Part shown: positions 49,206-54,329 of the stretch, piece after piece
How the letters are laid out: each line of letters opens with the position of its first letter
Numbering within the stretch: position 1 is the first letter of the stretch
Source: Diadema antillarum
Taxonomy: Eukaryota
Assembly: GCF_040938485.1 (NCBI RefSeq)
Contig: NW_027272018.1
Location: forward strand, 744,001 to 808,000
Direction: 5' to 3'
DNA length: 64,000 bases
Position numbers and translations under genes: made by a program
The notes under the pieces: model-generated
Databases searched by the model: none
The model's input: only the letters and a program-made list of their open reading frames with translations
Told to the model about the DNA's origin: nothing

Positions 49206-52200
49206 ATGCGTGGTCTTACTCTCTGCCTCTTCGCCGCCCTCGTGGCCGCCGCCTACGGCATCGCTCCTCTCCAACGCGTCGCGGAGAAGATCCAAAACAA
49301 GTACCTCGTCGTCATCGATGTGAGAACGCCCCGCCTATTCCCGTTCGATACCTCATTCGAAATAACTTTAAAGAATAACAGAAATACGTATTTTTCTGGA
49401 ACTCTTGTTAAATGTCTCACCTTCGGTTGTTTAGGAAGAGTGTACAAAAAAAAATTAATGATGTGCCTGCATGCAAAGTTACATTTAATTGTTGATCTTG
49501 AGATATATAGGTTCAGTAAAAATTACAATGCACAATGATTTGCTTTTTATCACATTTAACATCGACTTGGACTCGTCAGAGCATTATGGTCTACTTTTTT
49601 TAAGGGGGGGGGGGTATTTATTTCTCATGGTTTGTAGCTTAATGTTGTCTGTGTATTCTTTGATTTCACTAAGGATGCCGTGTGAAGCAAACACGAAATA
49701 GTGCGCTTTTTTCGATTTCGTGTACTTCCGACATGGTATTAATTGGGGTTCGAAATTTTGATTGAGCTTTCAAACCATAAGAAAAAAGGGAAGTGTGCTT
49801 GACAGTGAACAAGTCCACTGGTCAGTTTAAGACAACGGCCACTTTTGATTATGAAAAATAATGACCCTCGTTCACTGCCATTCGACAGTTGCAAGGCATG
49901 ATCTCTATCAACAACAACAAAAATCATTTGATTTTAGGAGAGTCTCGACGTCGGTGACTTCGGTGGTCGTCTGTCCGCCGCCTTCGCCAGCCGCCGCTTC
50001 AAGCTCGCCAAGATCCTCAAGTCTTTCAAGAACATGAAGACCCTCTCAGTCGAGCTCAGTGATGACGCCGTCGAGTTCGTAAGTCTCTCATGATATTTTG
50101 TGAAGCAATAAGAATAATAGTAATCAGGCAGTAATAGTAAAATCCACCACGATTTTAATTATCAATCTTTTCTTTCCCTTTAGAAAACACCGTGATCCAT
50201 TTACGTGACTTTACAATTTAGGCATGTTAGGAATACAAGGATATTTTAAGAAATAAAAATGTCATAGCTGTCTCTTCGAAAAGTAAAGTATGAGAAATAA
50301 CTCGATAAAGAACAAAGACAGCGTGAAAGGAATACGGTTAATTATTTCTGGTGAAATATTTGCCACCCGTGTATTCACTGAGTAGGACAAAAATAATGAT
50401 TACAATATGAACACATTTTCTCATGTAAGGTTAGTTGCGAGAGAAGAAAAATGGCAAGACAAGATGATTAATACAATGAAAATGACATATTTATCAATAT
50501 AGAATACAGACGTGTTTCATTATCATGATTTCATTAGTTGCGTCGCTTTGAGGGCGTCGTCCACGTGGAAGAAGACAGTGTGGTCCGCACCCAGGCTGTT
50601 GCCTCGTGGGGCCTTGACCGTATCGACCAGAGGTACCTTCCCCTCGACAACACCTACTCCCCATCCAGTAAGAATCCTCCTCTCTCTGATTCCCGTTCTA
50701 GCTGAATTCCGTATAGGCCTACATCCTAAGAAAAATAGGGTCTACTTTGCACCTTTAACAATGTCCCCCTGGAGCACCTTTACGGATGCAACTTTGCACC
50801 TTTCAGAGCAGTGTCATGATGGGAGCACTTGATGGGTGCAAATGCACCTTTCTGGTCTGAAAGGTGCAAAGTTGCACCCGTTATGGTGCTCCCATTGTGA
50901 TCGTGATCAAATAATTGATAGCAATCTAATGTAATGTGCTTTATTAACATTTTGACAATCCTACGAATGAAGTAGTGAAAATTTGAAGAATTCAGACAGA
51001 AGTATCTTGATCTGATTCTATCATCGCAATTTCATATAGCTTATATGACAAATATGAATGAATTATTCTTGCTGTCCGGCTAATCAACAAGTGCACCTTT
51101 TAAACGTATTTGTTTGCATAGATATATATGTCATAAAATGCTTTCCGTCCAGCATGATTGACCTTATGAAAGCAGTCCTAATCAGCAAAACGTTTATGTT
51201 TAAGTTTACGTTTTAATAAGTTTCTAACATTTTTTTTTTTCAGACAATGGTCGTGGCGTCAACGTGTACGTGATCGACACCGGTGTCTGGCCCACCCATA
51301 ACGACTTCGGCGGGCGTGCTGTCGCCGCCTACGACGCTGTTGGTAACAACAACGTGAGTATCACTTTGTAATTACGTCAACTGCAGGCAGAGCAAAGTTA
51401 TATTCAAATTAGTTTTTAATTTATCGGATATGTATTCGCTCTTTCCATAATGTACAATTAATTTACCTACACAACAAACATGAACATAAAAGACACATTC
51501 AATACTGTATCACTTACACACAGCTCATCTTCACACGAAGTTTTCACATTTTTTTTTTTCACAATGCACCGCTGCGCCTTTTTTCTTCATTTTCTTTCTC
51601 CATTCTGTGAGTGGTGACTGTAGAGTATCTCATTATTTGTTGTAGAAAACTAATTCTTAGGCCACTTTGATCCTCGTCTAGAGTTTGAATCGGATTATGA
51701 TGATGGTATATTCTGACATTGTATTTTGAGTTGTTTGTCCTTTGAACGGCAGGTTCATGCGATTCTTAAGTTTGCATAGCATGAAATAACACCTGCTCGT
51801 CTTCATCTTGTATTATCATGGAAAATGTACTTTTTAAAATCACTTGCCTGTTACACTTGTTATATTCTACTCAATCACTTTGTTCACTAGACTTTGTGTT
51901 ACAGATTGAACAATAAAATCGATCAATCAATCATTCAATCAATCAATCAATCAATCAATCAATCAATCAATCAATCAATCAATCAATCAATCAATCAATC
52001 AATTTGTTCTCTCGTGCCTCCCATACAGGGAATCGATTGCAACGGACACGGTACCCACTGCGCTGGAACCGTCGCCGGAACCAACTATGGTGTCGCTAAA
52101 TACGCCAACATCTACGGCATCCGCGTTCTCGGCTGTCTTGGCTCTGGCTCTACTTCTGGAATCGTTGACGGTGAGTTTACCAACATCCAGCAGCAGTGCT

Positions 52201-54329
52201 GCTTACCAACATGTCTAATGCACTGTGATGACATTGACCCTGTCTCGTCTCGGTTAAAAGTGTATTACAGTTACTAGTATTGCAAACAAGATGTAATTTT
52301 GATGAATTCAAAGGAATGTTCACAATAAGCTCCATCTCAGTGAATTTCACCATACATTCCGTAAATTTATATTATCATGGTGTGTGTTTTTTCTTAGATC
52401 TTGTATTTAATGCGCTTTAATGTCAAGTTTCTTAACTACTTGAGATGCATTTAAACTTCAAAAATGACTTTATCAGAAGGTTGGATTTTTCCCTTGCTGT
52501 TACAGAGGTTGTCACAAATTTCGACAAATTATACAATTGTAGCAATAAACTATATTTATGATTACATAATTAGACAATAATTAGGCTAGAATTGTATTCC
52601 TTGCTTCAATGAAAGGTATGGACTGGGTTGTGTCCAACGGCCAGAAGCCCGGAGTTGTGTCCATGTCTCTCGGCGGAGGAGCCTCCTCTACCACCGACGC
52701 TGCCGTCAAGCGCATGTACGACGCCGGATTCACCGTCTCGGTTGCCGCTGGCAACAGCGACGAGGATGCCTGTGGTACCTCCCCCGCCAGATCCGGATAC
52801 GTGAGTATAGATTCTTTCTCCATCTCATTCACTGTTGCTGCCTTACATTCTTTATTCCTTTTCGAAATACTTTGCACTGTTTGAAAGGATGCAAGGAAAA
52901 TTTGATCGCAAAACCATCTAATTCCATTCTTTTCATTTTGAGATATTTGCGACTATATTATACCTGCTAAAGAAAAACAGAGAAAACAAAAAGAAAATAT
53001 GGGCTTTTTTACCATAACCTCTAGAATATTCCTTGTTATGCAAGAAGTGAAGGAACACTGAAACGGCTTTATTTTGATCAATCTGATGATGGACTTACTT
53101 TAAAAGGTTTGAAAATGGCGCTTAGTCGTTCTTCCGATCAAACTCTTTAAATCAATATTACGAGGAAGTCTATGGTGTATGTTTTGATTGTAAAGCATGT
53201 GTTGCTCTGAACGGTAAGTATACTTGTGCATTTGAATTAGAGATGGTGTAAATCATGCAATGTGTAGAATGTTAAATCTAAATCTATGCTTATGCACCCC
53301 TGGCCCTGAGGCTTAAATCACTTATGGCTAAAACTTCAATCTTGAGTGTGCCATGACAGTATTGAATTCTTGTACTCCTAGAAGAATGGCGTAAGCACCC
53401 GAAATTTTGTCCTTGACATAATTTGCTCTACTTATTCATGTATGTATGTGTGTGTGTGTGTGTGTGTGTGTGTGTGACTATGTCATAATCATGTGCATTT
53501 AAAGATGAGTATTAGTGTGCTGGCTTGTTTTTGTGTGTGAACAGGCCCTGACCGTTGGAGCCACCGACAACACCGACGCCCGTGCCTACTTCTCCAACTA
53601 CGGCTCCTGCCTGAACATCTTCGCTCCTGGTGTCGACATCACCTCCGCCTGGAAGGGATCCGACAGCGCCACCAGCACCATCAGCGGTACCTCCATGGCC
53701 TGCCCCCATGTCTCCGGTATGACATAGACCCCATTTGTTTCCAATCCTCTTTACCTACTTTTATCTTTTGGGCTGTCTCATTTTTTTTTGTTCTGTATTA
53801 TTTTGTTGTTGTTGCTGTTGTTCAACTGATTGACCATTACGTGTTGTCTATCAGCTTTGGGTGGCATTAATATACAAATCAAGATTTGTGATCGTTGATA
53901 TATTGAACATGAAACATTGTCCAAATTGAAAATGTTAGGCGTTTGATACTTAATTTTTAATGTTGTAAACACAACACACTCTGATTTGTGTAGAAACTTT
54001 AATAATAAATGAAATGAAATGAAACGAAATGTGGAGGAGAGGCTAACAATTCAGGATTGAAATGTTCAGTTAATTTAGAAGATATATTATGTATTCTTGT
54101 CCTGGGCTGGCTAAGCGTCCTAACGATTTGTAGTGTTTCTCCCCATCACCATTCGACATTAATAACTTCACCCTCTTGTCTTATGACAGGTGTTGCTGCT
54201 CTGACCCTCGCCTCTTCTCCAAATATGTCGCCCTCTTCCGTCTACTCTGCGATCCTCAACAGCGCCACCAGGGGTCTGGTTACCGGCAGGGGATTCCTCT
54301 CACCCAACCTCATGCTCTACACCGAATAG
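49206..54329 (+). CDS. Secreted S8A subtilase, copy 3, 377 aa
   Basis: Exons 49206-49319, 49938-50078, 50538-50667, 51244-51353, 52029-52170, 52616-52800, 53545-53716, 54190-54329; same lengths and phases; triad intact; 18 aa differences from copy 1 (hand count). AATAAA at 54489-54494. Confidence 0.95.
50722..50900. mobile_element. Truncated CACTC-family MITE in intron of protease copy 3
   Basis: TA|CATCCTAAGAAAAATAGGGTCTACTTTGCACC... matches the 31920 family; right terminus missing. Confidence 0.7.
51922..52001. repeat. (TCAA)n microsatellite
   Basis: Tetranucleotide run just upstream of the acceptor at 52028. Confidence 0.95.

What the first reader, a model, noticed from the sequence alone, without database searches (positions are those of the whole stretch)
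49206..54329. Exon-by-exon mosaic identity: copy 3 introns are unalignable but some exons are nearly identical to copies 1/2
Seen (hand counts, copy 3 vs copy 1, coding exons 1-8): 1/114, 7/141, 8/130, 13/110, 22/142, 3/185, 6/172, ~26/140 nt differences. Exons 5 and 8 carry many synonymous changes, including AGC-to-TCT serine switches that imply deep divergence, while exon 6 between them has 3 changes and the last ~110 nt of exon 7 are identical to copy 2. Introns, promoter and UTRs do not align beyond short splice-adjacent stretches. Inference: recurrent gene conversion confined to exons, the only remaining homology. Differences cluster at the start of exons 2 and 7 and the end of exon 6, so tracts seem to stop inside exons, favouring DNA-level over cDNA-mediated conversion.
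Basis: partly seen in the sequence, partly recalled or inferred. Interest (0 to 1): 0.7.

Follow-up and report, generated by a model that had tools for sequence, protein, structure and literature searches.

The report
Exon-limited gene conversion, urchin protease genes
Two old neighbouring protease genes of the sea urchin Diadema antillarum keep some exons nearly identical by copying DNA between them while the other exons and all introns have drifted apart. It is a clean case, confirmed in a second species, of a well-known process.

Summary
Copy 3 (49206-54329) differs from copy 1 by 1, 7, 8, 13, 22, 3, 6 and 26 nt in coding exons 1-8. No intron, promoter or UTR aligns.

The genes encode secreted proteinase-K/aqualysin-like S8 proteases of Diadema antillarum.

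The decisive test could be run. D. setosum has two orthologues, matched by their introns: Sa corresponds to copy 1/2 and Sb to copy 3.
- Exons 4, 5, 8, a 17-nt island in exon 2 and the 3' end of exon 3 hold 60 old paralogue-specific differences kept in both species. Paralogue dS there is 0.48 against orthologue dS of 0.04-0.06.
- Exons 1, 6, 7, the 3' part of exon 2 and the 5' part of exon 3 hold none. Paralogue dS there (0.10-0.11) does not exceed orthologue dS (0.12-0.15).
- In exon 6, five synonymous sites are shared by both paralogues within each species, and the orthology tree is rejected (AU p=0.002).

Synonymous constraint is therefore refuted and conversion after speciation is shown. 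The second haplotype contig repeats the mosaic and carries a likely segregating tract in exon 7.

The mechanism is ordinary. This scan has already reported similar mosaics in other gene clusters of this genome.

The parts
49206..49319 (+). Copy 3 coding exon 1 (signal peptide and start of propeptide). Homogenised with copy 1/2.
   Evidence: It differs by 1/114 nt from copy 1. No old paralogue-specific site is kept in both species. An acceptor-like AG lies 3 nt upstream of the ATG in both lineages, so homology starts at an exon edge.
49938..50078 (+). Copy 3 coding exon 2 (propeptide). An old island at 49958-49974 is flanked by homogenised sequence.
   Evidence: Four old differences kept in both species lie at exon positions 21-37 (CDS 135-151), and there are none after position 37.
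50515..50611 (+). Homogenised tract made of the last 23 nt of intron 2 and the first 74 nt of exon 3.
   Evidence: The intron flank is 22/23 identical to copy 1 and is shared with D. setosum Sa and Sb, while sequence upstream is unrelated. The flank is absent from the C1801 paralogue and its orthologue. There are no old differences in exon positions 1-74.
50612..50667 (+). 3' part of copy 3 exon 3, an old unconverted segment.
   Evidence: Four old paralogue-specific sites lie at CDS 330, 371, 381 and 384.
51244..51353 (+). Copy 3 exon 4 (catalytic Asp region), old and unconverted.
   Evidence: It differs by 13/110 nt and has dS 0.49. Eleven old sites are kept in both species.
52029..52170 (+). 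Copy 3 exon 5 (catalytic His region), old and unconverted.
   Evidence: It differs by 22/142 nt and has dS 0.69. Twenty old sites are kept in both species, including the AGC/TCT serine switch at 52149-52151. Pfam PF00082 hit.
52616..52800 (+). Copy 3 exon 6, homogenised, with conversion after the species split.
   Evidence: Paralogues differ by 3 nt (D. antillarum) and 2 nt (D. setosum), while orthologues differ by 9 and 7 nt. Five species-shared synonymous sites lie at CDS 756-816 (window 52734-52794) and there are no old sites. The AU test rejects the orthology grouping at p=0.002.
53545..53716 (+). Copy 3 exon 7 (catalytic Ser), homogenised, with a likely segregating tract.
   Evidence: There are no old sites. 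The allele on contig C54 carries the derived copy-1/2 states at CDS 882 and 945 (window 53604 and 53667) and matches that haplotype's copy 2. The window allele keeps the ancestral states.
54190..54329 (+). Copy 3 exon 8 (C-terminus and stop), old and unconverted.
   Evidence: It differs by 26/140 nt. Twenty-one old sites are kept in both species, including the second AGC/TCT switch at 54216-54218.
25060..29737 (+). Copy 1 gene, conversion partner. Exons: 25060-25173, 25778-25918, 26777-26906, 27232-27341, 27773-27914, 28443-28627, 28987-29158, 29598-29737.
   Evidence: Intact ORF. It equals database protein P0269, named 'aqualysin-1-like [Diadema antillarum]'. Its introns are orthologous to D. 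setosum Sa.
37134..41579 (+). Copy 2 gene, a recent duplicate of copy 1 and a conversion partner. Exons: 37134-37247, 37855-37995, 38647-38776, 39071-39180, 39615-39756, 40286-40470, 40829-41000, 41440-41579.
   Evidence: It differs from copy 1 by 11 nt in the CDS. It equals P0160. D. setosum has a single gene at this place.

Best explanation
Copy 3 and the ancestor of copies 1/2 are old tandem duplicates of a secreted proteinase-K/aqualysin-like S8 protease gene.

Timing of the duplication:
- It arose in the Diadema lineage after the split from Strongylocentrotus.
- It long predates the D. antillarum / D. setosum split, because paralogue dS in untouched exons is about 0.5 against orthologue dS of about 0.1.

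What has happened since:
- Introns and flanks have diverged beyond alignment, so the exons are isolated islands of homology 110-185 nt long.
- Ectopic homologous repair between genes 12-24 kb apart (non-reciprocal interlocus gene conversion at the DNA level) has repeatedly overwritten some islands: exon 1, the 3' part of exon 2, the 5' part of exon 3 with 23 nt of intron, exon 6 and exon 7.
- The other segments (a 17-nt island in exon 2, the 3' end of exon 3, and exons 4, 5 and 8) have escaped in both species. Either they are now too mismatched (one difference about every 7 nt) to pair, or conversion there is selected against.

Shown: the mosaic itself; orthology by introns; normal synonymous rates in the look-alike exons; grouping by species in exon 6; grouping by orthology in the old blocks.

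Inferred: the repair mechanism, the direction of transfer, the number of events (at least five islands, plus at least one event after speciation, plus one still polymorphic), and why the old blocks escape.
For: - Counts and gene models; per-exon dS.
- Heterogeneity tests.
- Introns have no residual homology.
- Organism and protein identity: NCBI-named Diadema antillarum proteins are identical to my models, and the assembly size matches preprint 10.64898/2026.05.24.727502.
- D. setosum orthologues are assigned by intron and flank alignment at 78-88% identity.
- Per-exon paralogue differences are 1,7,8,13,22,3,6,26 and 2,14,7,16,23,2,2,24. Orthologue differences are 1,4,3,3,3,9,6,5 and 2,9,4,2,2,7,2,2.
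- Site classes: old differences kept in both species number 0,4,4,11,20,0,0,21 across exons 1-8, and all five species-shared sites lie in exon 6.
- Trees: the old block groups by orthology, and exon 6+7 groups the D. antillarum genes together.
- AU tests: orthology is rejected for exon 6 (p=0.002) and for exon 6+7 (p=0.011). Species grouping is rejected for the old block (p=1e-68).
- Block dS: homogenised blocks have paralogue 0.110/0.102 against orthologue 0.145/0.117, with a control paralogue at 0.141. Old blocks have paralogue 0.48/0.49 against orthologue 0.058/0.037.
- An outgroup-conditioned fragment test picks CDS 643-991, that is exons 6-7, at p=0.011.
- Exons 1 and 6 are among the least conserved against the next paralogue (about 55% and 65% amino-acid identity), so protein constraint does not explain their identity.
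- A shared 23-nt intron flank supports DNA-level transfer.
- A polymorphic tract lies in exon 7 of the C54 haplotype.
- A long copy 1 to copy 2 tract covering introns 2-4 segregates at the same locus.
Against: - The longest run of identical silent sites is not significant by itself (p=0.33).
- The amino-acid test comparing within-cluster with between-paralogue differences across eight exons is only marginal (p=0.056).
- Exons 1 and 7 show paralogue divergence equal to orthologue divergence, so for them conversion after speciation is not shown. They are only known to have been homogenised around or before the split.
- GC3 is not raised in the converted exons, so there is no signature of GC-biased conversion.
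- Only two haplotypes of one individual and one outgroup species were available.
- No reads were examined.
Confidence: 0.9

Rival explanations
1. There was no conversion. Exons 1, 6 and 7 look alike because their synonymous sites are constrained, for example by splicing enhancers, mRNA structure or codon bias, or because they mutate slowly.
For: The same exons are alike in the paralogue pair of a second species. Exons 6 and 7 encode highly conserved protein sequence that is nearly unchanged in S. purpuratus XP_787278.2.
Against: - Orthologue dS in exon 6 is the highest of all exons (0.22 and 0.17), and exon 7 is ordinary (0.16 and 0.05).
- Alleles of copy 3 differ at 2 and 3 synonymous sites in exons 6 and 7.
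- The control paralogue has 9 synonymous differences between species in exon 1.
- Exon 6 groups by species.
Confidence: 0.03
2. Conversion went through a spliced RNA/cDNA template. This would explain why the homogenised blocks are contiguous in mRNA coordinates (CDS 1-134, 152-329, 634-998) across introns 1, 2 and 6, which themselves stay unrelated.
For: Three blocks in mRNA coordinates would need fewer events than five separate exon islands. The exon 6+7 block is one continuous fragment in the outgroup-conditioned test.
Against: - The introns inside the blocks are all retained, whereas cDNA-templated repair is expected to delete them.
- 23 nt of intron 2 are co-homogenised with the 5' part of exon 3 and are not conserved in the next paralogue.
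- The edges at exons 5/6 and 7/8 fall within about 5 nt of the splice junctions.
- In D. setosum the donor flank of Sb intron 6 resembles that of Sa. This is weak evidence: 8 of 11 nt beyond the splice consensus.
Confidence: 0.04
3. The mosaic is an assembly artefact, with exon sequences of copies 1/2 polished into copy 3 or the reverse.
For: The preprint describes an assembly with largely uncollapsed haplotypes, 84% duplicated BUSCOs and 11x depth.
Against: Three independent contigs (C1130, C54, and D. setosum OZ188203.1) show the same mosaic, each with its own private differences. All copies keep intact ORFs and splice sites.
Confidence: 0.02

Closest known systems
Partial concerted evolution of old mammalian gene pairs (TUBG1/2, DDX19A/B, BMP8A/B; PMC2720389)
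   Same: Only part of each gene is kept alike by ongoing conversion for very long periods while the rest diverges. The test is also the same: paralogues are more alike than orthologues in the concerted part.
   Different: In those pairs the converted fragments run through introns as well as exons. Here the introns are unalignable and each converted piece is a single exon island.
Red/green opsin genes (OPN1LW/MW), reviewed in PMC3924837
   Same: They are tandem paralogues tens of kb apart with frequent conversion and a stable peak of divergence. Trees flip between grouping by species and grouping by orthology along the gene.
   Different: The polarity is reversed. In opsins the introns are homogenised and an exon stays divergent under selection. 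Here the exons are homogenised and the introns are lost to homology.
Other exon-limited conversion mosaics reported by this scan in the same genome (MGST exon 3, a Gly/Arg/His-rich secreted protein, pmar1, IL-17, GPCR and TLR clusters)
   Same: Same genome and same pattern: old tandem paralogues with patch-wise homogenised coding segments. These are AI notes and I did not re-test them.
   Different: This is a different gene family. Here the pattern is additionally confirmed with orthologues from a second species and a second haplotype.
GOT1 paralogues of Tigriopus californicus (PMC3728101)
   Same: [quoted passage not shown]
   Different: I did not read beyond the abstract. It concerns a different taxon and gene, and the balance between intron and exon conversion was not compared.
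Proteinase K / aqualysin-1 family (MEROPS S8A), e.g. PDB 4dzt and 5wsl
   Same: The encoded proteins align over the whole catalytic domain at E=1e-100 and carry the D-H-S motifs, a propeptide and a signal peptide.
   Different: This entry concerns the gene product, not the finding. No enzymatic data exist for the urchin proteins.

Membership tests
Interlocus (ectopic) gene conversion / partial concerted evolution | Within the tract, paralogues of one species are closer to each other than to their orthologues in another species. | tested here: met
   In exon 6, paralogues differ by 3 and 2 nt and orthologues by 9 and 7 nt. There are 5 species-shared sites. The AU test rejects orthology at p=0.002.
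Interlocus (ectopic) gene conversion / partial concerted evolution | Adjacent segments of the same genes give incongruent phylogenies. | tested here: met
   The old block groups by orthology, and species grouping is rejected at p=1e-68. Exon 6+7 groups the D. antillarum genes together.
Interlocus (ectopic) gene conversion / partial concerted evolution | The similarity is not explained by reduced neutral rate or by constraint. | tested here: met
   Orthologue dS in the homogenised blocks is 0.117-0.145, equal to the control paralogue at 0.141.
Interlocus (ectopic) gene conversion / partial concerted evolution | Polymorphisms are shared between paralogues, or tracts are still segregating. | tested here: inconclusive
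   There are two linked sites (CDS 882 and 945) in one haplotype and one site (CDS 693) in the other. With only two haplotypes the evidence is suggestive, not a population sample.
Interlocus (ectopic) gene conversion / partial concerted evolution | Transfer is non-reciprocal, with the donor left unchanged. | not testable with these tools
   This needs pedigree, sperm-typing or dense population data.
Interlocus (ectopic) gene conversion / partial concerted evolution | GC content is raised in converted segments (GC-biased conversion). This is a frequent feature but not an obligatory one. | tested here: not met
   GC3 by exon in copy 3 is 0.76, 0.81, 0.74, 0.73, 0.57, 0.73, 0.84 and 0.68, with no consistent excess in exons 1, 6 and 7.
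cDNA/RNA-templated gene conversion | Tracts ignore intron flanks and tend to remove the introns they span. | tested here: not met
   All 7 introns are retained in all copies. A 23-nt intron flank is co-homogenised.
Peptidase S8A (proteinase K subfamily) | A subtilase fold domain with the Asp-His-Ser triad in that order, plus the oxyanion Asn. | tested here: met
   Pfam PF00082 hits exons 5-7. The DTG, HGTH, AAGN and GTSMA motifs are present in the translation. The domain aligns with aqualysin-1 4dzt and keratinase 5wsl at E=1e-100.
Peptidase S8A (proteinase K subfamily) | An N-terminal signal peptide and an I9 inhibitor propeptide. | tested here: inconclusive
   PF05922 is precomputed for P0160, but the single-exon scans found nothing. 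The signal peptide is inferred only from the hydrophobic N-terminus.

The most novel reading that the evidence does not exclude
The homogenised blocks are contiguous in mRNA coordinates across three introns that remain unrelated (exon 1 into exon 2, exon 2 into exon 3, exon 6 into exon 7). Some transfers could therefore have used a spliced RNA/cDNA template while the introns survived. That would be a rarely documented repair route in animals.

A milder alternative is that the same exons have escaped conversion in two species because selection protects the paralogue-specific residues. All of the roughly 14 fixed replacements lie in the unconverted blocks.
Probability: 0.05. Interest if true: 0.65.

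Novelty: new member of a known kind. Interest (0 to 1): 0.3.

Why it matters
This is a tidy, fully controlled example of late-stage concerted evolution. Once introns have diverged beyond recognition, exons of 110-185 nt still act as separate recombination substrates, and the same partition into converted and escaped exons has persisted in two species.

Practical consequences:
- Whole-CDS trees or dS values for this urchin protease family would badly misdate the duplication. Whole-gene dS is 0.24 against about 0.5 in the untouched exons.
- Gene-family analyses in the highly heterozygous Diadema genomes should be done exon by exon.

It does not reveal a new mechanism.

Tried and rejected
- Synonymous constraint: rejected by orthologue dS.
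- Protein-level constraint as the cause of exon identity: exons 1 and 6 are among the least conserved against the next paralogue. The formal 2x8 test is only marginal (p=0.056).
- Residual intron homology: none was found. The intron 6 signal is a (TG)n microsatellite.
- Another paralogue as donor of divergent sequence into exons 5 and 8: no closer match exists elsewhere in the genome, and the divergent states are conserved in D. setosum.
- GC-biased conversion signature: not seen.
- Longest-identical-run test without an outgroup: not significant. It has little power with only two lineages.
- Exon-6 protein searches found only short fragments from an ENA metagenome (ERZ26222911) whose DNA could not be fetched. 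The route that worked was a full-length database relative (P0056), then the named Diadema proteins, then their contigs.
- Joined gene model: the spliced CDS and protein of my own model were never sent to a database search. Those searches used exon 6 by reference or database protein ids. Exons were joined only inside scripts, from window coordinates, for distances, trees and local alignment to loci already fetched.
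Full report
**What is in the window**

The window (G000:C1130:744001-808000) carries three tandem genes on the + strand, with a period of about 12 kb. Each has 8 coding exons, GT-AG introns and an intact 1134-nt ORF.

The product is a 377-aa secreted subtilase of the proteinase-K type.
- Pfam PF00082 hits exons 5-7.
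- The DTG, HGTH, AAGN and GTSMA motifs are present.
- The nearest solved structures are keratinase 5wsl and aqualysin-1 4dzt, at E=1e-100.

My models are identical to NCBI proteins named 'aqualysin-1-like [Diadema antillarum]':
- P0269 is copy 1.
- P0160 is copy 2.
- P0270 is copy 3.

The assembly statistics of G000 (1,754,659,819 bp in 2,963 contigs) match the D. antillarum draft assembly of preprint 10.64898/2026.05.24.727502 (1,754,675,526 bp in 2,964 scaffolds). The difference is about the size of a mitochondrial genome. That assembly has 84% duplicated BUSCOs against a k-mer haploid estimate of 0.70 Gb, so both haplotypes are largely retained.

**The observation**

Copy 3 differs from copy 1 by 1, 7, 8, 13, 22, 3, 6 and 26 nt in exons of 114, 141, 130, 110, 142, 185, 172 and 140 nt.
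- Both AGC/TCT serine switches exist.
- The last 112 nt of exon 7 equal copy 2.
- BLASTN aligns only the exons plus at most 23 nt of flank.
- Intron cores score like shuffled sequence under two scoring schemes. The single outlier is a (TG)n microsatellite.

Per-exon dS is 0.036, 0.10, 0.22, 0.49, 0.69, 0.067, 0.156 and 0.43.
- Heterogeneity is significant: chi-square p=1e-5 and permutation p=0.001.
- The exon 5/6 boundary gives p=2.5e-6 and the exon 7/8 boundary gives p=1.7e-5.
- A plain longest-run test is not significant (p=0.33).

**A second haplotype**

Contig C54 (2,041,492-2,071,803) is collinear with the window at 78-99.6% identity and carries the same three genes. I take it to be the other haplotype, for the assembly reasons given above.
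- Its copy 3 shows the same mosaic: 1, 7, 7, 13, 23, 3, 5, 27. This argues against misassembly.
- Copy 3 alleles differ at 2 synonymous sites in exon 6 and 3 in exon 7, so those sites are free to vary.

**The decisive test: orthologues**

A search with exon 6 alone found only fragments without retrievable DNA. A full-length database relative (P0056) led to the 90% cluster that holds my three proteins and two D. setosum proteins, P0271 and P0272. Their genes lie in tandem on OZ188203.1.

Intron and flank alignments at 78-88% identity assign orthology. I call the P0271 gene Sa and the P0272 gene Sb: Sa corresponds to copy 1/2 and Sb to copy 3. D. setosum has one gene where D. antillarum has copies 1 and 2. 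The split between copy 3 and copy 1/2 therefore predates the two species.

Per-exon differences:

| Comparison | e1 | e2 | e3 | e4 | e5 | e6 | e7 | e8 |
|---|---|---|---|---|---|---|---|---|
| Paralogues, copy 1 vs copy 3 | 1 | 7 | 8 | 13 | 22 | 3 | 6 | 26 |
| Paralogues, Sa vs Sb | 2 | 14 | 7 | 16 | 23 | 2 | 2 | 24 |
| Orthologues, copy 1 vs Sa | 1 | 4 | 3 | 3 | 3 | 9 | 6 | 5 |
| Orthologues, copy 3 vs Sb | 2 | 9 | 4 | 2 | 2 | 7 | 2 | 2 |

Site by site:
- Old paralogue-specific differences kept in both species number 0, 4, 4, 11, 20, 0, 0 and 21 in exons 1-8.
- Sites where both paralogues share a species-specific state number 5, and all lie in exon 6 (CDS 756-816).
- The contrast between exon 6 and exons 4, 5 and 8 gives Fisher p=2e-7.

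Trees and AU tests:
- The old block (CDS 330-633 plus 999-1131) groups by orthology, and species grouping is rejected at p=1e-68.
- Exon 6+7 unites all D. antillarum genes.
- Orthology is rejected at p=0.002 for exon 6 and p=0.011 for exons 6+7.

Block dS values:

| Block | Paralogue dS | Orthologue dS |
|---|---|---|
| Homogenised | 0.110, 0.102 | 0.145, 0.117 |
| Old | 0.48, 0.49 | 0.058, 0.037 |
| Homogenised-block codons in the control paralogue (contig C1801 and its D. setosum orthologue) | not applicable | 0.141 |

Synonymous constraint is thus excluded. At least one conversion after speciation in exon 6 is required. For exons 1 and 7 the data show homogenisation at or before the split, and for exon 7 probably also later (see below).

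**Constraint at the protein level does not explain the pattern either**

Against the next paralogue, on contig C1801, exon 1 is about 55% identical in amino acids and exon 6 about 65%. Exons 5 and 7 are about 85% and 81% identical.

The nucleotide ratio d(copy 1, copy 3) / d(to that paralogue) runs 0.03, 0.14, 0.20, 0.41, 0.68, 0.04, 0.17 and 0.44 across exons 1-8. A fragment test conditioned on that outgroup picks CDS 643-991, which is exactly exons 6-7, at p=0.011.

**Where the tracts end, and DNA versus cDNA**

With D. setosum as reference, they are young substitutions of the D. antillarum lineage:
- CDS 705, 804, 846 and 855 are derived in copy 1/2.
- CDS 861 is derived in copy 3.
- CDS 813 is private to one allele.

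Exons 6 and 7 are therefore homogenised from end to end as far as can be seen. Real internal boundaries exist only in exon 2 (an old island at exon positions 21-37) and in exon 3 (old sites from position 75).

DNA-level transfer is nevertheless favoured, for four reasons:
- The last 23 nt of intron 2 are 22/23 identical between the lineages in both species, next to the homogenised half of exon 3. Sequence immediately upstream is unrelated, and the C1801 paralogue lacks the motif.
- The block edges at exons 5/6 and 7/8 fall within about 5 nt of the splice junctions.
- All introns are retained.
- In D. setosum the donor flank of Sb intron 6 resembles that of Sa and about 270 nt of the copy-3-type intron are missing. 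This point is weak.

**Conversion is continuing at the locus**
- On C54, copy 3 carries the derived copy-1/2 states at CDS 882 and 945 and equals that haplotype's copy 2 there, whereas the window allele keeps the ancestral states.
- On C54, introns 2-4 of copy 2 have been overwritten by copy 1 (p-distance 0.008, 0.009 and 0.000). In the window, copy 2 keeps a D. setosum-like intron 2 (0.127 to Sa against 0.241 to copy 1).

**Family context**

In a protein tree, copies 1/2 and 3 of both Diadema species form one clade. It is sister to S. purpuratus XP_787278.2 ('proteinase T'). The C1801 paralogue is older and echinoid-wide. Conversion could make the duplication look younger in such a tree.

**Comparison with what is known**

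Partial concerted evolution that lasts for long periods is well documented, for example in TUBG1/2, DDX19A/B and BMP8A/B (PMC2720389) and in the opsin genes (PMC3924837). In those cases the tracts run through introns. Here the homology islands are single exons, which is the late stage of the same process.

This scan has already reported several such exon-limited mosaics in other gene clusters of this same genome. I did not re-test those notes.

**Limits**
- There are two haplotypes from one animal and one outgroup species.
- The direction of transfer and the number of events are inferred.
- My own joined gene model was never sent to a database search. Exons were joined only inside scripts.

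**Verdict**

This is a new example of a known process, of modest interest.

Noticed in passing
window 57689-60896 (satellite 57999-60002): A 169-bp satellite array of about 12 units lies in a 3.2-kb stretch that is absent from the other haplotype contig, C54. Related units stand in inverted orientation in the D. setosum spacer between the two protease genes.
   Followed up: partly
window 37996-39614 (copy 2 introns 2-4), compared with copy 1 at 25919-27772 and C54 copy 2: Window copy 2 keeps introns 2-3 that are 24-26% diverged from copy 1, and its intron 2 is closer to D. setosum (12.7%) than to copy 1. On the other haplotype the same introns are 99-100% copy 1. This indicates a long segregating copy 1 to copy 2 conversion tract, and suggests that copy 1 and copy 2 may be older than they look.
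   Followed up: partly
window 52801-53544 (copy 3 intron 6): The two haplotypes differ by 13.9% here, as much as either differs from D. setosum (13.3% and 9.9%). Segments in which one or the other allele matches D. setosum alternate in a patchwork. The other introns differ by 0.6-3%.
   Followed up: partly
window 52807-53075 and 52901-53147: The first ~270 nt of copy 3 intron 6 have no counterpart in D. setosum Sb. The stretch holds a dispersed repeat with more than 40 copies at 75-80% identity across the genome.
   Followed up: no
window 28878-28895 and 53442-53475: A (TG)n microsatellite sits 75-95 nt upstream of exon 7 in both paralogue lineages and in D. setosum. It is the only positional trace of shared ancestry left in the introns.
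   Followed up: no
window 50720-50899, with 31918-32109 and 44879-45070: A repeat inside copy 3 intron 3 also occurs, in both orientations, in the spacers downstream of copies 1 and 2.
   Followed up: no
window 23515-35583 and 35579-48296: The recent duplication unit holding copy 1 or copy 2 is about 12-12.7 kb long and ends about 0.9 kb upstream of copy 3. D. setosum has only one such unit.
   Followed up: partly
ENA metagenome assembly ERZ26222911 (proteins P0001, P0002): Two contigs of 20-23 kb in a metagenome assembly encode exon-6-like fragments (95% and 89-91% identity). One contig has its called genes repeated at about 12 kb. They look like sea-urchin host DNA, possibly a related tandem cluster. 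The DNA could not be fetched.
   Followed up: partly
G000:C1801 and C903 (loci L016/L021 and L017/L022) and D. setosum L025: The next paralogue differs by a single amino acid out of 377 between the two Diadema species, with dS 0.127. That is far stronger protein conservation than in the converting pair, which shows 6 replacements in each orthologue comparison.
   Followed up: partly
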